Positions 22,703-59,015 of a stretch of 64,000 bases of DNA are shown here, in pieces. The position numbers were made by a program, and so were the translations under genes. The notes beneath the pieces are model-generated. The model saw only the letters and a list, made by a program, of their open reading frames with translations. It did no database searches and was not told where the DNA came from. Source of the DNA: Oculina patagonica (taxonomy: Eukaryota); contig NC_135765.1 of NCBI RefSeq assembly GCF_052425735.1, positions 1,364,001-1,428,000 of the forward strand, written 5' to 3'. Numbering within the stretch: position 1 is the stretch's first letter; the number at the start of each line of letters is the position of its first letter.

Positions 22703-25700
22703 ATGGACCAACGCGACAAAACGTGTGCGCGGCGCACTTTTATCAACTTCGGGATACTAACAGCTGCATTATACATCATAATCGTGACGTTTTTCGTGGT
22801 AAATCTGAATCGTTTAGTTGTGTGGCAGTCTGCTAGAATTCAAACACTGGAAACTGTCACAGACGAGCTGACTGCTCGTGTTGACAAGTTGGAAAACAGT
22901 TTCGCAGCTCAGAAGACTGACGAGAAATCTGTGGGTGGAACTGATCGCGTTTTGGAGGGAAAATCAGCGCGTCTGAAAAACAAGGTAGGCTATTTCGACG
23001 GCGCGAAGTTAGTATAACTCTAGATAATTGCGTATTCAAATATTGCTTTGAATTTGCTTATCAGTGTTCGTAGAACTGATGCATTCATTAGGAAGGTGGA
23101 ATAAAAGAGGATTGTTCTTTTCTAATTTTCTGTAGCTCGCTTTATCCGATGTTCCTCAGGGGAGGGACAGAAGACAGTTTGACGGCTACTGTCCATGCTT
23201 ACAAGGTAATCTTGGTGCCAAAAATAATACTCTATTGACACGGTTAAGAGACTCCAAGGACATACATTTAAAAACAATTGGTTTGCATCAAAGAAGAAGA
23301 TGTACGCATAGAACAGGTCAAAACCAGTGAGAGGGGTGAAATTCAGCCTGTCTGCGAGTGAAAGAATTCCATTATCTCTATAGAACAAAGAAAGCTTAAA
23401 ATGAATGCCAAATGGCCTTTAGAGTTTGTTTACTTCCGTGTTTGGTGCCTATAAGTCGTGAATTTGTAAACTAATCAGTTTTACAAGAACCGAACAACTA
23501 AAACATTCACTTATCACTTGGTGTTTTGAAACTGGACTCCGAGCAACAAGTAAACATCTTTATATTGAGCTCATTTTATTTCGGTCAATCGCTGCAAAAT
23601 GTGATAGCGTGACCCTTAAATGGGGACAATAATAGTCTCGATGACAGATCAACTTAAACTGTTTTCTTTTGCATAATTTTGTTTCTCGGAAATCCTTGAT
23701 TTGTTTTGGCTAGAACAGATCGATGAGATTCCGCTGGAGCCTTAAATCTCGCCGGACAAAAATCCGGCGGAAATAGATATAAGTGAATTGTTGACGTGAC
23801 AAAACCCGCAAGGAACAATCGTAAATTTCGGCGGAAACAGCGTCTGGGTGCGTGAGTACGTGATAAGCTGAGCTTAACGTTTGAACAATAAAATACAGAC
23901 GACTTGACGACAGCTCGCCGATGTAAAAATAAGTTTTAGTCTTTGACCTCCACAGGAACAGCTTAGGAACAAAAGGCGGAGAACGTGTCAAGATATTTGC
24001 TTCAAATGGAACCAATGGACATTAAAATTCAATTTACACGTTGTGTAATTTGCATATAATGTATTTGTCATTCTGACCTTGGGAATTAATTGTTCAGGTT
24101 CATTCAAACATCAAAACAATTTGATTACATTTTCATTTGCAACTTTATTACAATGCAAGAGTATCTTTTAAGCTAAAAGCGAAAATTAAATATACCGCTG
24201 TACATTTTACTGCAAAGTTTTCACTTCAAACGCCTGGAATGAAAAACAGGTGTTGATTGCGTGACCGACGAAGAAGAAAATAATCGTGGACAAGGGAATC
24301 TCGAAATACGGGGACTCGCGGAACGCGAAAATTTTACATTGAAGAGCATTTAAATTAATGTTAAACGTTTTGGATGATTAAGTTTCGTTTCTTATTAGGA
24401 CTAGAATTCTCTGATTTTTGATGGCTTGAAATCATATTTTCCCCCAAACAATCATCTGTTTCCAAGAAAAGGAGAACAGTATCATAAATTGCAATTTTCA
24501 ACTCTATAATTCACCCGTCTTCTATTAATTTTTGTTTATATTTTCCTTTCAGGCCCTAAGGGAGATGTGGGTCCACAAGGACCCAAAGGAACTACAGGTT
24601 AGAAACTGCTTAGCTGATAATGAATCTACATGTATCTGCTTCAAGTACGTTTTAGAACCGAGAGTTTCTTGGCTCACACATGCATGCACACGCTGCCACC
24701 GAATGTTTTTTTGTGGTGGTCTTTATTAAATCTTTGAAATTACGCGAATTGGACAGTTTAAGCGTCGATCATTGGTCAATATTGCTACAATAGCCCTTCT
24801 TATTCACGCCGTGGTTAATCTGTTTCGGGTCACGTGGTACGCCGTTCGTCCCGGTGACGTATCAACAATGAAAGGAGGTTTTACGGAAACTTTGGAAAAC
24901 AAATGTTTTGTGCGCCAAAAAGAAAGTAAATAGTTCACAGACGTTTTGGGACTACGCGGCGTAACCGTTGCGTCAATACGCATACGTGACGTACAACGAG
25001 TGTGACTAACAAACGCTTGATATTTGCAAAGTTAAAATCTGCATACAAAGAAGACTGACGTAATTTGCCTTCCGAATGCTATTGCTTCGTGTTTCTTCAC
25101 ACAAAAAAGAAGAGCCTAGTGAATATTTTGTTAACATTTTTCAGAAGCGTGCTTTTTTCCAAGTAAAAAATGTCCCTGATGGAACTTCCTTTAGGCCATG
25201 ACAGTCCTATTTGCTCGTGAAGATATAGACTGGAATCGAACCAGCACATATTTTAATTTTCTTCCACTGATACTTTTCATTTTAAAGCTGCGCGGCCGTG
25301 TTTGTAACTATTTTCGTCAGCACAAAGGGACCTTGTAGATATTTAAAGAACCATTTTATTTGTTTTATTTCTTTCTAATCGTTTCGTTTTGTTTCTTTTC
25401 GTAGGTCGACGAGGTAAAAAAGGTAAACGAGGTTAGTTTTTTTTTCAGTAAAGGAAGACGATCGAATTGTCGCATATGTTGTCCGTGCCATACGTACCTC
25501 CCAGCCCACCTGAGGTTTGGTCCCAACCCAGGTCAACATGTCGAAAATGAAAAGATGGTGGTTTGGCCTTCAATGCTGAAAAAGTTATGAACAAGCTTTT
25601 GAAAAAGCAAATAAAGAGGAGCTGTATGACTGAATACACTTTAGCAGGAGTCCAAGTTAAATTATGCATTTTCATAACCTTAACTGAAGCATACTATCGT

Positions 25701-28700
25701 CCAGTTAGTCTTTTCGACTTGCCCTGTTAATACCAACAAATGTCAAGAGCTATTACGAATGTCACCCCCTACTCCTCGTACATTTGCGGCTGTTTGCTCC
25801 CTGATTGGCAGGGACTTAAAAAACTAACACGAAGCCCGTGTGAAAGATGTTTTCAATTGGTAAAGGTGTGCCGTTTTTAACCGTGATGGTTAATCACCAA
25901 ATGGCGCCTTTTCCTCAGGGCACAAGGGAGATCAAGGCCCCCAAGGTGAAACAGGCCCAACTGGTCCTAAGGGCTCCAACGGAACACAAGGACCTCCAGG
26001 GGGACCTGGTGTCCAAGGACCAAAAGGTAAGATTTCCATAAAGGGTTATAAGTATTAAGGGTGGTGCTTCACCTGTGTTGCAAAGTCAATACGCACAGTG
26101 CTTATCGCTTTAGCCGTTAAAAAAATGAAATTAACCAATCAGAACCCGCCTCCAGAGCACGAAACCAAGGGAAAAAGTCGCGTGAGCCAATTACAGGTTA
26201 CGATTAGTTTTGGTTGTGGATCGTGGCGAAAATATTTAAATCCTTATTCTGATTTGTTAAGGAAGAACGAATTTAGTAAACTACTTATAAAGTTAATTAA
26301 ACTACAAACGCCGAAGTAAACCGGCACGCAATTTATATCAAAAGTCATTACGAAAGAAAAATAAATTTGACTGATAACAAGCAACTGAAGATTAACTTAC
26401 CGTTTTTTCGGTTTTGCTATTGTCCGTTTTACCATTCAAAGGTTAACGCCTCTCAGTTCATTTTCAAACGATGCCAATGCGTGTTCACTGTAGATTCAGC
26501 ACACTGAAACAGAACAATTATTATATTAGAAGTGACTCTCATAATACATGTGTCGTGTTTCAGGTGACACTGGACCCATAGGCCCACAGGGAATAGGAGG
26601 TAAAAATGGCTCTCAGGGCCCTCCAGGTGTCAACGGGGCCCCGGGTGCAATAGGGGCCAAGGGCGAAATGGGCCTCCAAGGACTCAAAGGAGACATAGGT
26701 AAGAACTTGTTTGCAATGGATATTGTTAGCTAATAAATAAATCACCTTTATTTAGACACGGTGAGGATTAAAGCTATAAGCGTGTGGGCCGTGTATTTCA
26801 AATTGAATTGGAATTTGGAAGTGTTGGTTTTTGTAGAGGGGGCAAAACCGGAGAACCCGGAAAAACCCTCGGAGCAATTCTTGGACGAGAACAACAACAA
26901 ACTCAACCCACATGTGGTACCGGGCCGGAATCGAACCTGGGCCACATTGGCGGGAGGCGAGCGCTCTCACCACTGCGCCATTCCTGCTCCGACACAACAT
27001 TATGTTGTTTTGAGGAAATACCTGAATCTTCCAAATTTAAGTCACTTTCTCTTGGGTATGCGTGTGTAACAGTCACTCAGTGCCAGTTGCACGTGTCGAT
27101 CACTATACACCGATGATCATCAAAACATCTATTTACCTTATTGTTACTTATTTTCGCGGGAACTTAATTTCGCGAAAATGGAACGGGGATATTTCGCGGG
27201 ACTTAAATTTCGCGATTTGGCCAAAAAATCGTAATTAACATAAAAAATACAATAGAAAACGTTTGAAATAAATTTTCGCGGGTCTTAAATTTCGCGATTT
27301 TTTGAAAATCGCGAAAACTAAGTCCAGCGAAAATAAGTAACAATAAGGTAGGTTTCTGTCGTAAAAGTCCCCGTTTCTTCTCGACGTTGTGCTTTTCGCT
27401 GCTTAGTAGAAGCACTATTCCATTCTTTGTTTTTCACTCAGAGCTACCTGCGGGAACATATAGTTACTGACTAATTTGATTTGTATTTCACTCTCACTTT
27501 TCAGTATTGTGTACTATTGTGAAACTTATACACATTTTCTATGTCGTGAATTGCAAGTGAATATACGGTAAAGACACGAAACGTTTGGTATAGGGCAAAA
27601 AATACCAAACATATTCCAGGGGCACTCAAAGTTCCTTTTTTGATCTTTTTTGTTCACAGGACCTCCTGGTCCGCCAGGCCAATCGGTAAGTAAAATACTG
27701 GCTGGCTTTTTTCTACACTATTGATACAAATTATTAACATAGAGTATAAGCCCCTGAAGGGATTTGAAACCTAGCGAGGTAAAGAGATCTTAATTTGACC
27801 TTGCGTAGTAAGACTCGAACACACTGCCGTAGGAATTGATCTTTCCTTTCCGTGGTGATTGAGCTTTATGCAGTGGTAGATTCTCGAGAACCAAGGTCTA
27901 AGACACTAAATTCATTACGCCCATTCATCAGTACTGTATAATTCTAATGATTTCTTTTGTTGCTATTTAGATGGGTGAAAGCATCCACCTTGTTGGTGAT
28001 GGCCACAAAATTCGAAATCCAAGTAATATGCTTTGTTATTGATTGACATTGACATCATATAACTAAATACACTGTAGTTCTTCTCACTGAGTGAAAACGC
28101 GCATGATTTGGAAACTAATCAAGTGCGAATACAGTAAAAGCCCGCGAGTAAGAACCTATTATTTTTCAGGTTAGCCTAAACAGGTTCTTACATAAAGGGT
28201 TATTAACACAAACTTAGGCTAATCAGGTTCTTAATAGGTCCTTAATTTCTGAAGAAAAAAATTTCAATACTTTTATAGAAATTTTAGTGGTATTCGGCCT
28301 ATTCCTTGTATAAAATTTGCATACCACATAAATGCTTACGTAAAAATGAAGCACTACTCATTTAGAATATGACATGATATACATGCACAGTAATGCTTTG
28401 TTCAAACTTATTTCCCAAAAGCAAACATTTTTAATCAATTTTAGAAAATAAGAACCTGTTTCCAAATTTTAGGCTAAATAGGTTCTTATAAAAAGGTATC
28501 TAATTTGCAAATTTTAGCCTAACAGGTTCTTAAATGTTAGGTTCTTACTCGCGGGTTTTTATTGTATTCGTCACCAGGTTCCCACCGCATTTCGAACTGG
28601 GTATTGAAACACAGTGAAGGCAGCATCGTGTACCACTCACCAACCGGACACATTGAGGTGAAGAGAAAAGGCTACTACTACATATACAGCCAAATGTACT

Positions 28701-28939
28701 ACTATGACGGTTCCACCATACAGATGGGTCACAACACCTATATCAATCATGAGAAGGTGATGGAAAGTGCGGGGAGCGTTATAAGCGCCGAACGAAAATA
28801 CAACACCAAGTATCATGGCGGCGTTTTCTTACTTCAGGAAAACGACACCATCTCCGTTCACATACCGTACACCACGCACTACTTCATGGACAGCGAGGGT
28901 AGCTTTTTCGGAGCGTTTTTGCTGCACTATATCGATTAG
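22703..28939 (+). CDS. G3: collagen-containing TNF superfamily ligand, ~368 aa, exons 22703-22984, 23136-23205, 24553-24597, 25405-25431, 25919-26026, 26564-26698, 27660-27685, 27971-28022, 28578-28939
   Basis: Exon 1 paralogous to G2 ([11 protein letters not shown]), furin RDRR, CPC, ~38 Gly-X-Y triplets including [18 protein letters not shown] strand A, and a THD exon ending in TAG. Phases are consistent (1107 nt). Confidence 0.9.
26790..26990 (-). mobile_element. tRNA-derived SINE in G3 intron 6
   Basis: On the - strand, tggcgcagtggtgagagcgctcgcc...ggttcgattcc (A/B-box-like head) followed by a non-tRNA body. Confidence 0.6.
27136..27348. mobile_element. TA-flanked MITE
   Basis: TA|CCTTATTGTTACTTATTTTCGC...GCGAAAATAAGTAACAATAAGG|TA. 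Confidence 0.7.
28132..28564. mobile_element. TA-flanked Tc1/pogo-type MITE ending 13 nt before the G3 THD exon
   Basis: TA|CAGTAAAAGCCCGCGAGTAAGAACCT...AGGTTCTTACTCGCGGGTTTTTATTG|TA. Confidence 0.72.
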
Positions 28940-30047
28940 ATTAGAAGGTCGAGGCCATAGGTAGGAAGTTAACCTCTAAAAGGTTAAGGTGCGGTTTGTA
29001 CTCCCCTTAATATCCCTAGCGGAATAGTGTAAGGAGCTTGTCGTCGCTGTCTTCGATCGTTCAAGTAAGGCATTAGGCTCGATAGAATAAGATCAGGCTT
29101 AGTTATCAAAATAAGGCTTAAAGGAGAATTTGCTGTCTCAGTTTAGGCTAGAATTCTGTTGTCTAAGATATCCAACCCGACCAGACGCCGTCTTTCTGTT
29201 TACCGGCCTAACGCAAACAATAATTAGTTATCCTACTGATGGATTATCCTTGTAAGTGTATTTGAAGGTTGTAATGTTATCCTGCAACTAATATCTCACT
29301 AGCTGCGCTAGCTTTCCGAAGGGTATAATGTAGAGATGTATTGTCCATGCTTAGACATCAGGATTACGATGTTGTGCCTGGTTGGCCTGTGGTCTCGATG
29401 CTGCCTGATCTGTGCCTCTTGCCGGTTCCACGACAACTCATTGGCTGATTTGTTATTCATTTAACCATCAACATCTTCTGCCTAACACGCATGAATAAAA
29501 AAACAGGCATGGAATTTACTTAATCACAAACTTTTTGTTGTTGTTTCTTTTGAAGATGTTTAATAGCGTACCCAGCAATGGGATACTGATTTTGTATATA
29601 TATATTCTGATGACTGTATCATGGGGTCGAAATTGTTCCTTGAAAGCAAATTATTCGATAGATTAATCGTGGATTGTTGAAGTGGCTAATCGACCAGTTA
29701 ATTAATTGACAAACATTTCACTGATTGAATGACTGAGTATGACTGATTGAATAATACGATCGATTGATCGACAAAATGATTGACAAACAGACAATACAAA
29801 GACAGACAGACAGGCAGAAAGCAGACACGATTGCCTTATGATCTTGAAACTGAGTTATGTGTTGTGACGTCATTTAAAATAATAAGTGCAAAGTTTTCAC
29901 ACAGTAGTTTTTACATTAATTTTAGTGGCTTTCATACTCAGAAAATGCATATCAAAGCCTCTTATGCCCTTGTTTTTAATTCATGATCAAAACAAAATTA
30001 AAATTCGCAGCGATTTCCTTATACCGACATTGGTGTTTGTTTCGCAG

Positions 30048-30409
30048 TATCTAGACGCACAGTTCGGAACTGGTTGGTGAAGTACAGATCAGGCAGAATT
30101 CAGCACCATAACGGGGTCATACAAGTACAAATATCTGGATTTTATTTCGTGTATTCCCAGATGTTTTACCATGATGGAACACCACTTCAAATCAGTCATC
30201 AGTTGTTCGTCAATTCAGAGAAATTCATGGAGAGTACATCTGCTGTTGTTAGTGTAGCTAGAAAATATAACACCAACTATCACGGGGGCGTCGCTTTTCT
30301 GAACACGACGGATCGCATTTCTGTCCGAACTCCATTTTCGACTCTATATTACATGAACCCAAGTTCTAGCTATTTTGGCGCATTTCTGCTTCATCCTACA
30401 ACACGTTAA
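30048..30409 (+). CDS. Extra intact TNF-homology-domain exon downstream of G3 (candidate alternative last exon of G3, or relic second THD)
   Basis: Acceptor tttcgcag at 30047, phase 1, open 362-nt frame (..RTVRNWLVKY..GFYFVYSQMFY..YHGG..YFGAFLLHPTTR*). No own TM or collagen exons lie upstream. Confidence 0.8.
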
Positions 30410-31389
30410 CCCTAGTCTTCTGATTGAAATACACATTCTCTACACTGACAGCCAGAGACTGCTTTCAATGTTAATTCTGGGAATTTGGAAGTTTATCAAG
30501 CTTGTAACCCGTATGTTTTTATGATTTGACCTCCCTGTTCGATCGTTGCTGTAAGAAGAAAAAACATGTTACTAACACCCGGGATTTAAAAGTTTAAAAT
30601 CGGCTTCAACTTCATTAATCAGTTTCTATTTTGAAGGCAAAGGAGTAGCTCTGATGACACTGTGATGTCAAACGCACCCGAAAGAAAACTCGAATAAAAG
30701 CCTTCGGACTCCTTGGTCAGCGGTTGGTTTCCAGGGAACTGGCTGAGTTACCTGGGCATTAGTTTATGCATGATACGTTTGAGGAAAAGGGTCCTTAGAC
30801 CTCTAAGAAACAACCGAAACCAAGATATTCTCTTGCCGAAACTGAGGTTTGTTGCAATTGTTTGCGAAACCTTCAGTTATAGTCCTCAGTATATTTCCTG
30901 TTCATAAATACGAAGCACTGTTTCTCAACGTTTGAAATATTTTTTTGCAAGGGAAGACCATCTTTGCACTTTTGACAAACGCATCGCAATGTAAAAAAAT
31001 AGTTTTAATGAAAAAAAAACTTGGAGAGGACTGATTCTTGAAACATGCAAACAAGCCCTTAAAAGGCAGATTGTTTTTTATATCCATACAAACAGTGAAA
31101 AAAAAAACCCAATACACTCGAACAACTACAGATAATAGAGAAAGTGTATTTCAACCACAATCTCTCTCTTCTTCCCGCTCCCTGGGAACGAGGTTGTCCT
31201 GAACAAGGCGGTCATTAATACGGTCTCAATGAGAATCAGCTTATCTCTAGTTTCTGATCAGATTGTGCCGCTTACATGAAGCCCTTTGGTATCCAAAGCT
31301 TGTAACATAGCGTTTACATAAATGTCAGTATTACTGATTTCGCGCTTGGTGAACAACTGCTATGCAAGTTAACTTTAGCTTTGTAGTTA

Positions 31390-31484
31390 CAGTTAAATCC
31401 CGATAACTCGAACCTTTTGAACCTTCAAGGGAAATCGAAAAAGGTTTGAGTTAGCGGGAGGTTCAAGTTATCGGGATTCGACTG
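31390..31484. mobile_element. Very short pogo/Tigger-like MITE
   Basis: TA|CAGTTAAATCCCGATAACTCGAACC...GGTTCAAGTTATCGGGATTCGACTG|TA. Confidence 0.6.
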
Positions 31485-32966
31485 TAGTTAGTATAACAAA
31501 AGAACGTTTTTTTAAAATTATGTAGTGACCATGGATGTTAAATTTTATGGAAGTTGAGCAGTGGATATTTTAAGCATCGCTTGATGTAGCAAACTTTGTC
31601 GTTTTATTTTCAGTAATACGAGTTGTAAGTATCACTTATTCGTTGTTGTAAACGAAATAAAATAAGCGTTTTTGTACTGAACTATTGCTGTCGAAAATCT
31701 TTATTTGGGTCACCACTGAGTTAAAATGGCAGAAAGCGAATTGCAAGATATTATGCAATGTTATTTTCGCTCACTTCCCCGGTTCCCGGCACCCAGTCCC
31801 CTCTCTTTTCAGGCAGCGAGAGACAGTGTCATTTGTTACCTTACGGTTATTACCAAAGGGAAACAAAATTAAGCATAATCAACTTGAAAAATTCTTTTAC
31901 AAAAAGATGCCGGTAATTTTGTTCTTTCTGGATATGCAAATTTTCGTTCAATATCAAGTGAGGTTGTTCTTTTACTGAACATTTAATTCCATCTTAGCTA
32001 TATGTTCATTTAAAACTCGTTCACATGATATCACTAACTCTATAAACTTTTCGGAAAATCGCTAAATTAAATAGACGCTAAATCTTGCTTTGAAAAATCG
32101 CTAAAATTAGTAGCCTCTAAGGTATATATGATAGTTTTTCATTCACAAAACGCCAAAGGTTGGACTCGTGATCGACTGACAAAACGAAAGCAACACATAT
32201 TAATTACTGAAATCCCCTTTTGGTAACCTTATTTTAAACGGTGTCACGTATAACACAAAATTCCACAGATAACAGATATAAGTAGTTCACGTGCTCCTCA
32301 CATGGAAACGTTTGACTTGTCACGTGACAGAGTTCTGTGTGCCAACAGAACTTACAACACAACAGATGTTGCTGTCACGCAGGGCTCGCGGGAGCAAATC
32401 TTCCCCACAAAAGGCCTGCGAATACAGCCGCCTCTCATCGCCCCCGCTAGCGGTGAGAGGCGGCTGTATTCGCAGTCTAGCCTGAAAAGGTGCGGCCACA
32501 TTTTGAAGAAAGCAAATTTATATCCAAAGCAGAGGTTTTTTTACGAAAAGAAAGAAATTGATAGTTTACTCTAACAACAACCGAAATTGGAAGGATTTGC
32601 AGTACACGGTATCATTTGATCTTTATGATAACGTGCTACTAATCGGAGAAGGCATTCCTTCTTAATAAAACTTTCCTGCAGTATTCAGCGATACTAACTT
32701 TAAATTTTGCACATTTTCTTCTGGCTTTGTTACCAGAAAATATATGATTAATTGGTTAGCCCTGGGTTAACTACACTTGGTAGACAAGTCACCGCATTGA
32801 ACACTTATTTCAGGGGCAAACATTGTAGATCTGTTGGCAATCTGCCCTGTTAATTCGAGTCTTGAATCTTCTGCTCTGAGGTTAGTGTGGAATAACACTG
32901 TCACGTAATTGATATTTTGGCTTAGCACCAGGTCAGGTTCACGTGATCGCTATCCTTGTTTTATAA

Positions 32967-55000: not shown

Positions 55001-58000
55001 ACAGTTCAAGCTGGGACACTCAGTGGAGATGAATTATCCAATTTCCAATCCATAAGCGGCGTATAAACCTTAACTTTCCAGGGACGGCGTTAACTTTTGG
55101 CTTTAAAGCGAAAGTTTTCGGAAAATTTTAAACTTTGTATGAAGAATTTTGGCGGGAATAACACAGCAACTGCGCACGCGCGCTGCGTTTGACCGCTGTG
55201 TGCCGGTACCCATATATACACCTGGGTGGACAGCGGCACTATGAGAGTAAAGTGTCTTGCCCAAGAACACAACACAATGACCCCGGCCAGGCCTCGAACC
55301 CGGACCGCTCGATCCGGAGTTCGGCGGCGCACTAACCATTAGGCCACCGCGCCTCCCAAATTAAAAATTACAAATTAAGCATAACAATTAATGTCAAAAA
55401 TCCCAACTGGCGAACCAATTGCGTATTTACAAGGAGGAGATGAACTCGGCTTTACCGTGAAACAACTCCAGGAAGTGGTAAGAACGGGACTTAAATCCGG
55501 GAACTCCGAATTTCAAGTCTGGCGCCCAAACCGCCTCAGAAACGCTGCCTCTTTAATGTTCTTTACGAGTGTATTAATTCTTGGAACTTTGGCAAGTATT
55601 AGGCAAATACAAATAAAAAAATAAAAGACAAAAACTAATCTGGTAATCGATACCATAAAGAAGTCATAAACACCCCTTGCGCTCGCAAATACACAGAGAG
55701 ATCCGGGCGTTTCTAATTCTTGTCTACTAAAACTGAGTAGTTTTTAGTTCATTGGAGAATAATTTCACGGCAATGACGAAATTCATCAGCTGATCTCCCG
55801 TAGGCTGATATCGATATTTGTCATTATTATATAAACTGCAGTGGTATAGCGAGTGGTAGCACCTAGATAAAAATGGTATCACACATGTGTGGATAAAAAT
55901 GATATTCACAAATGTGTGATATCATTTTTGACCAATCAGCTCACAGTTTGCCACTTTTCAATGTTCAATGAGCCAAAGTTTATCGATATTAAGTCGAAAC
56001 ATCTTCGGATCTTCCTCGGCAATCTTTGGTATCACACTCGAAGATAAATTTCACTCGTGAGCTATCGATTTGAACACTCGAAGATAAATTTCATATCTCC
56101 GTGCAACCATGTATTATCCTCTATTTATCCAACGATTTTCTCTTCTCTCCATTAGAAGAAGCATTACAAGGTATCATAAGTAAAAACCAATCGTGATTTC
56201 TTTTGCAGTTTCTGAAAGGCAAACAATTACCAACTGGGACATCAAGCACGTGGAAGGCAGTATCTTGTACCACTCGCCATCCGGACACATTGAGGTGAAG
56301 AGAAAAGGCTACTACTTCATATACAGCCAAATGTATTACTTTGACGGCTCCCCCTTTGTAATGAGTCACAGCACCTACATAAATAAAGTTCGGGTCATGG
56401 AAAGTTCGGGGAGCGTTATAAGCACCCATCGGAAGTACAACACAAAATATCATGGCGGCGTTTTCTTACTTCAGGAAAACGACCTCATCTCCGTTCACAC
56501 ACCATTCTCGGCCAAGTACCACATGGATAGCAAGCGTAGCTTTTTTGGAGCATTCCTTTTTGGAAATGCAGAAAGGCAAGGTAAACATTCATTGATTGAT
56601 TGCTTGATTGATTCATTCATTTACTAGGTAATTACACTGAAGAACCTCTGGACGCACTAAATTTTTTGACTAGATGTGTTTCTGAAAAAATCGTTGTTGA
56701 GTTTAAGGATGCATCTGTGGAGCTCTAAAATGACCACAAACTGTGACTAAAAATTTTTAACTCATCCGGTCCGACGTTTCGCAACCGACGGACCTCATAG
56801 GCTTGATATCTTGGGTGGTCGCTGTCGGGAGGTTCGACTGTCCGCAAATCATTTCAGTATTTAATTCATAATTTCGCTACGAGAATGTATATATGGGCAC
56901 GTAAAACAAAATTGCTAATTACTCGGCTATTAAAAAATGAAGGTTCAATACTAGTTTTACTGGAACTCTATCCACCGAATTTTGAGCCGTACGAATAAAC
57001 AAATACATGTGATGCTCTGCCAATGCGACTGAGCTATAAAGCAGTAATGAACAAGTCAAAGGGGAGTTCAGAAGTCATACACATGGGCTGTCGATAGAGA
57101 TCTTCGCAAGGCAGATGTAAAGCTAGATAGCACAGAAAATCTTAGTGAGGCAAATCCACATTAACGGCTTGGTAACTGTTAATTTTAAATAGCAATAAAC
57201 TTAACTTAAAAGTGTTATTTACAGTGGAGTTCTTTTCTTACTTTCAGTGCTTTCTCCTCCCACAACCCTACCTCCTACTACACTAACGGGTAAGTTGCGA
57301 GGGGCCTTAGGAGGTAAAATTGGAACTGAGATATGCACAAATTTTCACTGGGAAAATGGATTTGGGTCACTGGGACTCGGAATCACAAACAAAAAACAGT
57401 GAAACTGGGAATGGGATTTGGGAAAATTTGGGAACCAAAAGGCTGGGAAATGGGATATGTACCCCCCCCCCCCTCCTTCAGGACCCTCCGTTGACGTTAT
57501 TCGTTTGATTACGTCACTAGACCATTTATTGTGTGTTTGAATGCTGTTGCTTAGATGTACGAGCCCGCCACCAATGTTTTAGCACACTGTGAGAATTAAA
57601 ATGTCTGCTTCCTTATTCATTCAGTTGCAAATTGCAAGACATCATGTGTTAACAATCACGAGAAGGGAATTATTTGCATCTGGTTTGGTTTTAACTGGGA
57701 ATCTCTTTTTTTTTTCTTTTTCTGAGAAAAAGGAGCGAAGCCAACCACATCGGTAAGAATTCTGTTTTTTACCTTTTTCCAGACTAGGTATAACTTGAAA
57801 ACCACTTGTTTTAATAAGTGATTGCTAACTTTGTAGGGGCAGTGATAGAGACCAAACTAACACGTCCCATCGGTGTCTCCCAATCTCCTCACACTCAGGG
57901 GAAATGGTTGCTAATACAACTTTATTCTTGTGTGGACTTGTACGCAGTTTCAGCGTGCTTACTTGGTCTGAGCCTGTTTATCTCATATCATTTTTCCTGT

Positions 58001-59015
58001 TCTTCTCATTTGTATTCATTCAAATAGTGACGAACTTTATCCGTTTACCGGACCTGTTTTTTTTCTTAAGGTAAGAGCAAGCATCTACTTAGCTGGAGAT
58101 GACACAAGCCTTCGAAATCCTGGTAAGTGAGGTTCATTATTAACCCGTCAGTTTATTCCTGTCATTTCATGTCACCCGAAGATATTGAGTTCAAATAAAT
58201 CATGCTGAACCTTTTTGAGGGGCCTGACGGGGTAAAATGGGAACTGGGACTTGGGCAAATTTTCACTGGGAAAATGAGATTTGGGTCACTGGGACTGGGA
58301 ATCACAAACAAATAAACAATAGAACTGGGAATGGGATTTGGACAATCGGAAAAACAATAGGATGGGAAATGGGTTTTGGGGCAAAATTGGGGCTGGGAAA
58401 TGGGATTAATAATTAAATGGGACTGTCGTTTTTGAATGCCGTTTATTTTCGTAGAGGTTTAAGTTTCGTTTATTCCCTTCACAGTCGCAGTTAAACCTTC
58501 AGCCCATGTTAGAAGCTTTTTACGAAATTTAAACCTTGCAAAAATAGATGTCATAAAACTCGCGCACTCCTTTTCATATTTATATAGCGTTCGTCTCAGC
58601 CCATTATATTCAAACATAACTAATCACGGATTGAACATTTTGTTTGTTAACAGTTAGTCATATCATAGCAAACTGGATTGTTCGCGACAAGATAGGCTCC
58701 ATTCAATACGACAGAGGCTTTATTATAGTCACGACACCCGGACACTACTTCATATACAGCCAAATGTACTATCACGACGCGCGCACACATGTAATGGCAC
58801 ATCACACTTACATCAACAATGAAAAGGTCATGGAAAGTATTGGAAGTTCAATCACTGATAGCACAAAGGACAACACCCGATATCATGGCGGAGTATTTCT
58901 TCTTCGAGTGAATGACACCATATCAGTTCGCATTCCGTACATCCGGGAATACAACATGAAAACTGACGCCAGCTTTTTCGGAGCGTTTCTGCTGTATCCT
59001 GGTGAATCACGCTGA
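52041..59015 (+). CDS. G5: collagen-containing TNF ligand with two tandem TNF homology domains, ~429 aa, exons 52041-52232, 52343-52397, 52881-52952, 53414-53503, 54012-54037, 54140-54182, 56209-56580, 57727-57752, 58071-58122, 58654-59015
   Basis: Exon 1 is nearly identical to G4. Furin RVRR, CTC, 21 Gly-X-Y triplets, IQESIHLVG plus THD1 ending CAAG|gtaaac, linker EKGAKPTTS, second strand-A exon VRASIYLAGDDTSLRNP, THD2 ending TGA. Total 1290 nt in frame. Confidence 0.82.
54522..54850. mobile_element. MITE copy 1 (TIR CACACAGCGGTCAAACGCA, 9-bp TSD GGGTTACCC)
   Basis: TIRs and TSD read directly from the sequence. Confidence 0.8.
54883..55202. mobile_element. MITE copy 2, inverted relative to copy 1 (9-bp TSD CCGGTACCC)
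   Basis: Reverse complement of copy 1 with few differences; TSD at 54874-54882 and 55203-55211. Confidence 0.8.

What the first reader, a model, noticed from the sequence alone, without database searches (positions are those of the whole stretch)
27971..30409. Orphan intact THD exon behind G3: possible swappable receptor-binding domain by alternative last exon
Seen: G3's first THD exon ends in TAG (28939), yet 1.1 kb downstream lies a second, divergent, uninterrupted THD exon of identical length (362 nt). It has a clean phase-1 acceptor compatible with the strand-A exon donor at 28022. Each THD exon is followed by an AATAAA (29494, 30693), and no clear linker or strand-A exon lies between them. 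Inference: one stalk could be spliced to either of two THDs, giving isoforms or collagen-enforced heterotrimers with different receptor specificity. This would be a much larger switch than the 2-residue EDA-A1/A2 splice switch. Alternatively G3 is a former two-THD gene: a donor-like ATAG|gtagga remains at ~28960 just after the stop.
Basis: partly seen in the sequence, partly recalled or inferred. Interest (0 to 1): 0.78.

Follow-up and report, generated by a model that had tools for sequence, protein, structure and literature searches.

The report
Coral TNF gene with swappable head
A coral TNF-family signalling gene carries two different receptor-binding "heads" one behind the other; related corals have gene models that splice the same collagen stalk to either head, and a conserved RNA element that can pair with the start of either head may help set the choice.

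Summary
G3 is a type II, collagen-stalked TNF ligand of Oculina patagonica. Its THD exon (28578-28939) ends in TAG. An intact, divergent 362-nt THD exon (30048-30409, "THD2'") follows 1.1 kb later, with a phase-1 acceptor and no strand-A or linker exon of its own.

THD2' is not a relic:
- It forms an orthologous clade across robust and complex stony corals.
- dN/dS is 0.11-0.20.
- The layout and the THD1 stop codon are kept wherever both exons could be read.
- Protein models of Orbicella faveolata (isoform X3), Porites lutea (X2), Montipora capricornis (X1) and Porites evermanni join the shared strand-A exon to THD2' through the predicted Ile codon.

The "alternative last exon" picture needs refining. 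In two other corals the polyadenylated or fully spliced THD1 mRNA runs unspliced through THD2', so THD2' sits in the 3'UTR of the major mRNA. The second isoform would then use a distal 3' splice site.

In the four runs laid here only 28022>28578 was listed. THD2' was covered, but unspliced.

New here: the best-conserved spacer block (29372-29430) is complementary to the 5' part of both THD exons, in overlapping registers. It may act as a docking/selector-type switch; this is inferred, not shown. The two-THD ancestor reading is not supported.

The parts
22703..22984 (+). G3 exon 1: start codon, short cytoplasmic tail, type II transmembrane segment, coiled stalk start
   Evidence: tblastn with O. 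faveolata P0164 and D. pertusum P0171 gives 80-83% identity. The splice donor was read.
23136..23205 (+). G3 exon 2: basic RDRRQ motif (furin-like; inferred) and CPC motif
   Evidence: tblastn; boundaries read.
24553..24597 (+). G3 collagen exon (G-X-Y)
   Evidence: G-X-Y scan; ag/gt boundaries in phase 1. No joint was listed for it.
25405..25431 (+). G3 exon [10 protein letters not shown]
   Evidence: Joint 25429>25917 (cut +2) in the RNA-like runs X1, X3 and X4; boundaries.
25919..26026 (+). G3 collagen exon
   Evidence: Joints 25429>25917 and 26024>26562 in X1, X3 and X4.
26564..26698 (+). G3 collagen exon
   Evidence: Joint 26024>26562; G-X-Y scan; donor read.
27660..27685 (+). G3 last collagen exon (GPPGPPGQS)
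   Evidence: Joint 27684>27970 (cut +1) in X1, X3 and X4; boundaries.
27971..28022 (+). Shared strand-A exon ([17 protein letters not shown] + 1 nt); phase-1 donor used by both isoforms
   Evidence: Joint 28022>28578 in X1, X3 and X4. The same exon precedes either THD in orthologous proteins.
28126..28570 (.). MITE-like repeat with 39-nt terminal inverted repeats. It fills the intron and ends 7 nt before the THD1 acceptor.
   Evidence: the repeat finder, arms 28126-28164 and 28532-28570, 90% complementary. Contig depth runs to thousands in all runs. Absent from L002, whose intron is about 110 nt.
28578..28939 (+). THD1 coding segment (proximal 3' splice site); TAG at 28937-28939; the default isoform
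   Evidence: Pfam TNF 2.8e-13. Joint 28022>28578. dN/dS 0.06-0.09.
28593..28648 (+). Selector-like stretch inside THD1 that is complementary to the 29372-29430 block
   Evidence: Duplex -63.8 kcal/mol, z -6.6. Consensus of 38 pairs, 91% of cells paired, 5 compensatory pairs across 9 sequences.
29372..29430 (+). Docking-like conserved block: reverse complement of the 5' part of both THD exons. It is 3'UTR in the THD1 mRNA and intronic in the THD2' isoform.
   Evidence: Core 29381-29413 is identical in the window, L001 and L002. It is the top conserved spacer block, 33/40 invariant against a background of 0.29. Duplex scans.
29494..29499 (+). Proximal AATAAA; facultative and not conserved
   Evidence: X4 contigs stop near 29587, whereas X1 and X3 run on.
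30048..30409 (+). THD2' coding segment behind the distal 3' splice site (tttcgcag|TA, phase 1); TAA at 30407-30409
   Evidence: Pfam TNF 8.4e-13. Orthologues at 66-93% identity. dN/dS 0.11-0.20. The acceptor is conserved. Joined to the strand-A exon in four orthologous protein models.
30061..30131 (+). Selector-like stretch inside THD2' that is complementary to the 29372-29430 block (perfect core 30084-30096)
   Evidence: Duplex -64.9 to -71.7 kcal/mol. Consensus of 24-36 pairs, 91-93% of cells paired.
30693..30698 (+). AATAAA behind THD2'. Contigs of X1 and X3 run past it; a further AATAAA lies at 31656.

Best explanation
G3 is an EDA-like TNF ligand: a type II membrane anchor, a basic motif, a collagen stalk and a C-terminal THD. 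Its last shared exon (27971-28022) encodes beta-strand A and ends in a phase-1 donor. That donor can be joined to either of two acceptors in the same phase.

The proximal acceptor (28578) gives the default THD1 protein. The distal acceptor (30048) removes THD1 and its 3'UTR as part of the intron. It gives a protein of the same length, with the same anchor, stalk and strand A, but with a THD only about 49% identical.

THD2' has no 5' exons of its own. When the proximal acceptor is used and the weak proximal poly(A) site is passed, THD2' rides silently in the 3'UTR.

Shown here:
- the layout of the locus;
- its conservation across stony corals;
- purifying selection on both THDs;
- the THD1 junction in RNA-like runs;
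- long THD1 mRNAs that contain THD2' in two other corals.

Inferred from orthologous protein models, not seen in this species: use of the 28022>30048 junction.

Inferred from sequence alone: a conserved 59-nt block between the two THDs pairs, in overlapping and so mutually exclusive registers, with the first 15-75 nt of either THD segment. It may thereby bias which acceptor is used. My own estimate for this part is about 0.4.

Also inferred: the two isoforms differ in receptor binding, and may co-trimerise.
For: Anatomy and chance:
- establish the exons, phases and Pfam hits.

Species:
- G2 of the window is 100% identical in its exons to O. patagonica ACROYT_G026995.

Orthologues:
- Intact THD2' sequences at 66-93% identity were found in many coral contigs.
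- The order strand A, THD1 with stop, 0.36-1.2 kb spacer, THD2' holds in L001, L002, L007, L008 (P. evermanni), L009 and L010.
- The stop is conserved and so is the acceptor.

Selection and phylogeny:
- dN/dS is 0.11-0.20 for THD2' and 0.06-0.09 for THD1.
- The THD2' clade has support 96/91. It includes O. faveolata X3, P. lutea X2, P. evermanni and M. capricornis X1.

Junction:
- P0164, P0161, P0166 and P0174 read ...IHLVGDG.KI.NP-I-(S/A)(R/K)RTV.NW..., which is the predicted a|ta Ile codon.
- M. foliosa X3 has the same stalk with THD1.

Fold:
- Strand A plus THD2' of O. faveolata gives a full jelly roll, pLDDT 90.6. The nearest solved structure is EDA-A1, 1rj7, TM 0.89.

Transcripts:
- Joints 25429>25917, 26024>26562, 27684>27970 and 28022>28578 appear in X1, X3 and X4.
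- X1 and X3 cover 28817-30823 and beyond without a break. X4 stops near 29587.
- L011, L012, L013 and L014 are fully spliced THD1 mRNAs that run through THD2'. L012 ends in AATAAA plus a poly(A) tail.

RNA element:
-. Duplex energies are -53 to -79 kcal/mol and z is -2.3 to -7.8 against dinucleotide shuffles.
- 91-93% of cells are paired across 9 sequences, with 5 and 2 compensatory pairs.
- The other five THD exons of the window have no partner better than -54 kcal/mol within 1.5 kb.
Against: - No 28022>30048 joint was among the 15 joints listed for four runs; 103 further joints were not shown.
- In X1 and X3 the contigs cross the 30048 acceptor unspliced.
- All Logan-derived and ENA-derived THD2' proteins are calls on unspliced sequence. 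This is expected, because a minor isoform shares both flanks with the major mRNA and cannot assemble as its own contig. Even so, it means there is no direct transcript evidence in hand.
- I could not inspect the evidence behind the database isoform models.
- O. faveolata isoforms X1 and X2 were not retrieved.
- For the RNA element, the two exon arms are constrained by coding and are paralogous, so some dual complementarity is expected once one pairing exists. There are few independent lineages, and the consensus structure was derived from the same sequences it was then counted on.
Confidence: 0.7

Rival explanations
1. THD2' belongs to a separate transcription unit. A promoter in or near the 1.1-kb spacer makes an RNA of its own, coding or non-coding.
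For: In X1 and X3 the contigs over 30027-30823 have a higher mean k-mer depth (81 and 86) than the spacer contigs (13-40). X4 expresses G3 but has no cover at all over THD2'.
Against: - The spacer holds no strand-A, signal or TM exon in any species.
- The open frame of an unspliced RNA would start at a Met inside strand C. It would give about 82 aa with no strands A-B.
- Contig depth is one figure per contig and is a poor guide (warning).
- Spliced THD1 mRNAs in other corals run straight through THD2'.
- Four orthologous protein models join THD2' to the G3 stalk.
Confidence: 0.07
2. G3 is a decayed two-THD gene, like its neighbour G5. THD2' is then a leftover second domain that lost its linker and strand-A exon and is no longer used.
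For:
- A donor-like sequence follows the TAG in the window.
- A weak strand-A-like peptide overlaps the stop.
Against: - THD2' is intact in every species seen, with dN/dS 0.11-0.20.
- The TAG stop of THD1 is shared by every locus that holds both exons, including Porites.
- The donor-like motif and the weak peptide are not conserved.
- THD2' forms its own old clade and is not sister to the second THD of G5.
Confidence: 0.03
3. The conserved block at 29372-29430 is not a splice switch. The duplex would instead serve as an editing complementary sequence for ADAR, or as a double-stranded 3'UTR element that controls stability, localisation or translation of the long THD1 mRNA.
For: - Both arms and the block sit together in the mature long THD1 mRNA of two corals.
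- An exon paired with a conserved non-coding complement is the classic layout of recoding sites (established knowledge of GluA2-type sites).
- L012 has two A-C mismatches in the core helix.
- The acroporid RNA contig L014 has S where P0165, 16 cluster members of unknown kind (Logan and ENA), has N in the paired stretch. That is an A/G difference.
Against: - There is no A>G excess among the differences in the RNA-like runs over the laid stretch. X1 shows A>G 18, T>C 25, C>T 32.
- Both pairings start 14-20 nt behind a 3' splice site and overlap on the block. That fits a choice between the two sites.
- None of these functions excludes the others.
Confidence: 0.25
4. THD2' is conserved only as RNA, as part of the 3'UTR and its duplex, and is never translated. 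The database isoforms would then be annotation artefacts.
For: THD2' lies in the 3'UTR of the major mRNA. No spliced THD2' contig was recovered.
Against: - The duplex covers only about 70 of the 362 nt, yet the whole frame, its length and its stop are kept.
- Substitutions are strongly biased to synonymous sites over the full exon.
- THD core residues are invariant: 45 columns are shared with THD1.
- The same junction appears in the models of four species from separate annotations.
Confidence: 0.04

Closest known systems
Ectodysplasin A (EDA-A1/EDA-A2)
   Same: The architecture is the same: a type II membrane protein with a basic cleavage-type motif, a collagen G-X-Y stalk and a C-terminal THD. 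EDA-A1 is the best solved structural match (1rj7, TM 0.89, 26% identity). In EDA, alternative splicing also changes which receptor is bound (established knowledge: EDAR against XEDAR).
   Different: The EDA switch is a two-residue difference made by an alternative donor inside one THD. Here the whole THD after strand A (119 residues, about 49% identity) is exchanged. Orthology to EDA was not tested. Receptors are unknown.
TWE-PRIL (TNFSF12-TNFSF13 read-through fusion)
   Same: One TNF ligand's membrane anchor is spliced to the THD of the next gene downstream. This gives a second ligand from a shared 5' part (PMC6262789, abstract).
   Different: APRIL is also a complete gene with its own promoter and 5' exons. 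THD2' has none, and it even borrows beta-strand A, so it can only be made through G3. TWE-PRIL also lacks a collagen stalk.
Docking-site/selector competing RNA structures in mutually exclusive splicing (Dscam1 exon 6, 14-3-3 xi and others)
   Same: One conserved non-coding element is complementary to a sequence associated with each alternative. The pairings overlap, so only one can form at a time.
   Different: - The selectors lie inside the coding segments, not upstream of them.
- There are only two alternatives.
- The alternatives are terminal segments reached through alternative 3' splice sites, not cassette exons.
- No effect on splicing has been shown.
- This is recalled knowledge used as a lead, not a tested membership.
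G5 of the same array (two THDs in one chain)
   Same: It is the same gene family, in the same tandem array, with two divergent THD exons in series behind one collagen stalk (note s1-293933).
   Different: In G5, THD1 has no stop and ends in a donor. Linker exons and a second strand-A exon follow. In G3, THD1 ends in a conserved stop, and there is neither a linker nor a second strand A.

Membership tests
TNF superfamily ligand (THD, Pfam PF00229) | Sequence match to the TNF homology domain above the curated cut-off | tested here: met
   THD2' scores 48.8 bits and THD1 50.4 bits, against a cut-off of 23.
TNF superfamily ligand (THD, Pfam PF00229) | Complete ten-strand jelly roll, including strand A | tested here: met
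   The model of O. faveolata strand A plus THD2' has pLDDT 90.6 and pTM 0.86. The best PDB matches are EDA, BAFF and APRIL. This was tested on the orthologue (88% identical), not on the window's own spliced product.
TNF superfamily ligand (THD, Pfam PF00229) | Trimer formation | tested here: inconclusive
   A modelled trimer of two THD1 chains and one THD2' chain from Montipora scored 0.88 against 0.02 for the best control. The mark was reached by 51 of 78 solved complexes and by 2 of 108 mismatched pairs. Runs agree in at least 88% of contacts, and the partner's pLDDT is at least 79. Close relatives of known complexes can pass from memory.
Collagen-stalked, EDA-like TNF ligand | N-terminal type II anchor, G-X-Y repeats, C-terminal THD in one reading frame | tested here: met
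   Exons read. Four joints seen. The orthologous full-length proteins P0164 and P0171 carry PF01391 and PF00229.
Alternative terminal coding segments by alternative 3' splice sites | One donor and two acceptors in the same phase, each followed by an open frame to a stop | tested here: met
   Conserved in 7 genomic loci.
Alternative terminal coding segments by alternative 3' splice sites | Both junctions observed in transcripts of this species | tested here: inconclusive
   28022>28578 was seen in three RNA-like runs. 28022>30048 was not among the 15 joints listed, and 103 joints were not shown. Only assembled contigs were available, not raw reads.
Alternative terminal coding segments by alternative 3' splice sites | Both forms present in related species | tested here: met
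   THD2' forms: O. faveolata X3, P. lutea X2, M. capricornis X1, P. evermanni. THD1 forms: M. foliosa X3, D. pertusum and the Logan mRNAs P0172, P0173 and P0175. The evidence behind the models could not be inspected.
Alternative terminal coding segments by alternative 3' splice sites | Each alternative under purifying selection | tested here: met
   dN/dS is 0.11-0.20 for THD2' and 0.06-0.09 for THD1.
Docking/selector competing RNA structure | One element complementary to a site at each alternative, with overlapping pairings | tested here: met
   Control scans of five other THD exons found nothing comparable.
Docking/selector competing RNA structure | Pairing kept through compensatory change | tested here: inconclusive
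   There are 5 compensatory pairs for block:THD1 and 2 for block:THD2' across 9 sequences, with 91-93% of cells paired against 25-45% when slid. Lineages are few, and the structure was derived from the same sequences.
Docking/selector competing RNA structure | Pairing changes splice-site choice | not testable with these tools
   Needs minigenes or structure probing.
Read-through fusion of two complete genes (TWE-PRIL type) | The downstream THD is also an independent gene with its own 5' exons | tested here: not met
   There is no strand-A, TM or signal exon between THD1 and THD2' in any of 7 loci.
Single-chain two-THD ligand (as G5) | THD1 open to a donor, linker exon(s), second strand-A exon | tested here: not met
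   The TAG stop is conserved, and there is no linker and no second strand A.

The most novel reading that the evidence does not exclude
A single conserved RNA docking element pairs either with the start of THD1 or with the start of THD2'. In this way it decides which receptor-binding domain a coral TNF ligand carries. This would be a competing-structure splice switch of the Dscam type, working in a cnidarian on whole signalling domains, and kept since before the split of robust and complex stony corals.
Probability: 0.3. Interest if true: 0.85.

Novelty: new variant of a known kind. Interest (0 to 1): 0.7.

Why it matters
Corals have very large TNF ligand and receptor repertoires, linked to immunity, apoptosis and bleaching, and ligand-receptor pairing there is largely unmapped.

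A gene that can put either of two old, selected receptor-binding domains on one anchor and collagen stalk would be a compact way to redirect a signal. If the two isoforms co-trimerise, it could also make mixed trimers. It would be the largest splice-driven change known to me in a TNF ligand; EDA changes two residues.

The isoforms already sit unremarked in automatic annotations under misleading names such as "macrophage receptor MARCO-like". My three topic searches of the paper library and one accession search found no description of them.

The conserved element with double complementarity gives a concrete hypothesis for how the choice is made, testable with a minigene. It would extend structure-guided exon choice to cnidarians.

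It also carries a practical warning. Because THD2' sits in the 3'UTR of the major mRNA, read counts over it do not measure the THD2' protein isoform. Only junction reads do.

Tried and rejected
- The weak strand-A-like peptide at 28932-28961 (E 0.72) and the donor-like CCATAG|gtagga were treated as possible remains of a fused second strand-A exon. Both were rejected because they are not conserved in L001 and L002.
- The single read-laying run (5,901 letters; X1, X3, X4, X16) did not list a 28022>30048 joint. Because 103 joints were hidden and only contigs were available, this is not evidence of absence.
- Contig depths hint at extra cover over THD2'. I do not rely on them, given the tool's own warning.
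- The look-up of encoding contigs found no record for P0164 or P0174. The O. faveolata and Montipora loci could therefore not be read.
- The stalk-based protein search was swamped by collagen words. It did not return O. faveolata isoforms X1 and X2.
- Representative-library hits to THD2' were all calls on unspliced DNA or paralogues.
- Rfam gave only sub-threshold hits in 28900-31700.
- A first whole-spacer duplexfold gave meaningless genome-long pairings and timed out. It was replaced by 60-nt window scans. One fuzzy-regex script also timed out.
- The reverse complement of the conserved block is not a conserved ORF: there are stops in L009 and L010. An antisense coding exon was therefore rejected.
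- Three topic searches and one accession search of the paper library found no paper on coral TNF isoforms of this kind.
- A findings search by words returned nothing.
- The modelled heterotrimer passed its controls. I treat it only as compatibility, because close family members pass such tests.

Full report
**What is there.** The window is a tandem array of collagen-stalked TNF-family genes on the + strand.
- tblastn with the two exons of the finding locates seven THD exons, at about 7.9, 17.6, 28.6, 30.05, 47.1, 56.2 and 58.7 kb. It locates only six strand-A exons.
- G-X-Y scans place collagen exons in front of five of the THD exons.
- The exons of G2 are 100% identical to Oculina patagonica protein ACROYT_G026995.
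- Every detail of the finding checks out. These are the strand-A exon 27971-28022, the THD1 exon 28578-28939 ending in TAG, the 362-nt open THD exon 30048-30409 with a phase-1 tttcgcag|TA acceptor, and AATAAA at 29494 and 30693.
- Both exons are bona fide TNF domains by Pfam.
- No strand-A or linker exon lies between them. The only candidate, 28932-28961, is at chance level and is not conserved.

**The gene.** Homology to full-length coral proteins, ag/gt boundaries and four joints seen in RNA-like runs give the G3 exons. They are 22703-22984, 23136-23205, 24553-24597, 25405-25431, 25919-26026, 26564-26698, 27660-27685 and 27971-28022, followed by the THD. Either THD gives a 368-codon frame.

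**THD2' is old and under selection.** Protein searches found intact orthologues at 66-93% identity in many coral-derived contigs.
- Six genomic loci of other corals keep the order strand A, THD1 with stop, spacer of 0.36-1.2 kb, THD2'. They are L001, L002, L007, L008 (Porites evermanni), L009 and L010.
- The TAG stop of THD1 sits at the same place in L001, L002 and L007, and THD1 is also closed in Porites.
- The THD2' acceptor, with a good pyrimidine tract, is conserved.
- Pairwise dN/dS is 0.11-0.20 for THD2' and 0.06-0.09 for THD1.
- In a maximum-likelihood tree the THD2' sequences form one clade (96/91) on a long stem. The clade includes Orbicella, Porites and Montipora proteins and is separate from THD1 and from both THDs of G5.
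- By my knowledge of coral systematics, Oculina and Orbicella are robust corals, and Porites and Montipora are complex corals. The pair therefore predates that split.

**Is it spliced to the G3 stalk?** A length-tolerant search with a Porites THD2' orthologue returned full-length proteins with collagen and TNF domains. They are O. faveolata XP_020603222.1 ("macrophage receptor MARCO-like isoform X3"), P. evermanni CAH3195754.1 and, in the same cluster, P. lutea XP_073256505.1 ("isoform X2").
- Their N-termini are orthologous to G3 exon 1.
- They read ...[25 protein letters not shown]..., that is, strand-A exon, an Ile codon, then THD2'. In the window the last base of 28022 plus TA of 30048-30049 also makes ATA, Ile.
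- Montipora gives the clearest pair. M. capricornis isoform X1 and M. foliosa isoform X3 have nearly identical stalks, but carry THD2' and THD1 respectively.
- I could not inspect the evidence behind these models.

**This species' reads.** On 25300-31200, runs X1, X3 and X4 behave as RNA: introns are empty and four canonical joints appear, including 28022>28578. X16 behaves as DNA.
- No 28022>30048 joint was among the 15 listed; 103 more were hidden.
- X1 and X3 cover 28817-30823 and beyond continuously, and their contigs cross the 30048 acceptor unspliced.
- X4 stops near 29587.
- Only contigs were available, so the absence of the joint is not a finding.

**A refinement: THD2' sits in the 3'UTR of the major mRNA.**
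- Logan RNA contigs L011, L012 and L013 come from three runs of one related coral. L014 comes from an acroporid-like coral.
- All four are fully spliced THD1 mRNAs: the complete ORF is present and strand A abuts THD1. All four then run on, unspliced, through the whole THD2' segment.
- L012 ends in AATAAA and a poly(A) tail about 1 kb behind THD2'.
- A canonical poly(A) signal between the two THDs exists in only 3 of 7 species.
- The second isoform is therefore better described as use of a distal 3' splice site inside a long composite terminal exon. In O. patagonica a facultative proximal poly(A) site is added.
- This also explains why assemblies never yield a separate THD2' isoform contig. Both of its flanks are shared with the major mRNA, so only the junction itself is unique.

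**A conserved element with double complementarity.**
- The best-conserved block of the spacer is 29372-29430. Its core, 29381-29413, is identical in three species, and 33 of 40 positions are invariant in four species against a background of 0.29.
- The block is the reverse complement of the 5' part of THD2' (30061-30131; perfect core 30084-30096). In an overlapping register it is also the reverse complement of the homologous part of THD1 (28593-28648).
- Predicted duplexes are -53 to -79 kcal/mol, with z from -2.3 to -7.8 against dinucleotide shuffles, in all seven genomes and both mRNA contigs.
- Across nine sequences the block:THD1 consensus has 38 pairs, with 91% of cells paired and 5 pairs showing compensatory double changes. 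One example is G-C to A-U through a synonymous AGC>AGT change. Block:THD2' has 24 pairs, 93% paired and 2 compensatory. Slid controls give 25-45%.
- The balance differs by lineage: the longest perfect run is with THD2' in robust corals and with THD1 in the acroporid-like sequences.
- The other five THD exons of the window have no partner better than -54 kcal/mol within 1.5 kb. The values here are -68.5 and -70.8 kcal/mol, both at 29370-29373.
- The block is not a conserved antisense ORF.
- Both pairings begin 14-20 nt behind a 3' splice site and exclude each other. The reading I favour is a docking/selector-type bias of acceptor choice.
- Alternatives are an editing complementary sequence or a 3'UTR double-strand function. 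None has been tested.

**Protein level.**
- Strand A plus THD2' of O. faveolata folds as a complete jelly roll (pLDDT 90.6), closest to EDA-A1.
- Between the two clades, 45 columns are invariant and shared. These include strand A, the NW motif, the YSQM strand, the GG strand and the FGAF strand. Twelve columns are fixed differences, which by eye fall mostly outside those conserved strand motifs.
- A modelled trimer of two Montipora THD1 chains and one THD2' chain scored 0.88 against 0.02 for the best control. The mark was reached by 51 of 78 solved complexes and by 2 of 108 mismatched pairs. Contacts agree in at least 88%, and the partner's pLDDT is at least 79.
- This shows compatibility only. 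Close family members pass such tests.

**Rivals.**
- A decayed two-THD gene is contradicted by the selection on THD2', the shared stop and the tree.
- An independent gene lacks any 5' exons, and its unspliced frame would be useless.
- RNA-only conservation cannot explain codon-level constraint over the whole exon.

**Comparison and novelty.**
- In architecture and fold the gene is EDA-like.
- The closest functional parallels are the EDA-A1/A2 splice switch, which changes two residues, and TWE-PRIL, which puts the anchor of one gene on the THD of the next (PMC6262789).
- Here the downstream THD has no gene of its own and borrows even strand A.
- The isoforms exist in automatic annotations. My three topic searches and one accession search of the paper library found no description of them.
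- I rate it a new variant of a known kind. The RNA element is the most novel and the least proven part.

Noticed in passing
window 28126-28570: A MITE-like element with 39-nt terminal inverted repeats fills the intron between the strand-A exon and THD1. It ends 7 nt before the THD1 acceptor. It is multi-copy (contig depth in the thousands in all runs) and absent from the orthologous intron of L002, which is about 110 nt. It might weaken or alter the proximal acceptor in this species.
   Followed up: partly
window 30824-31109: About 286 nt present in the window are missing, replaced by ACAAAA, in X1, X3 and the DNA-like X16 (joint 30823>31110, ends GA..CC). This is an insertion/deletion polymorphism in the distal 3'UTR, not an intron.
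   Followed up: no
window 26679-27466: A second very high-depth repeat sits inside the G3 intron between 26698 and 27660. On the - strand and in other frames it contains long ORF-like stretches. It is probably a transposon fragment.
   Followed up: no
window 29780-29830: A (GACA)n-like microsatellite lies in the spacer. Contigs of all runs break there, and it varies in length between species (alignment A1).
   Followed up: no
L014 about 1690-1700 against protein P0165: Inside the paired stretch of THD2', the acroporid RNA contig reads Ser (AGC). P0165 is otherwise near-identical (16 cluster members of unknown kind, Logan and ENA) and has Asn. This is an A/G difference and could be editing, a SNP or a species difference.
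   Followed up: no
window 56209-59015 (G5): I read the G5 two-THD structure directly. THD1 is open to a donor at about 56581. Linker exons lie at about 57248-57289 and 57727-57752, a second strand-A exon at about 58071-58124, and THD2 at 58654-59015. There is no block complementary to its THD exons.
   Followed up: partly
L002 3998-7387 (- strand): A reverse-transcriptase ORF of 1129 aa (RVT_1, weak) lies about 1 kb upstream of the G3 orthologue's strand-A exon in a related coral.
   Followed up: no
database names of orthologues: The orthologues are auto-named "macrophage receptor MARCO-like", "collagen alpha-1(XVII) chain-like", "complement C1q subcomponent subunit C-like" and "ectodysplasin-A-like", because collagen words dominate. 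This hides them from TNF-family surveys.
   Followed up: no
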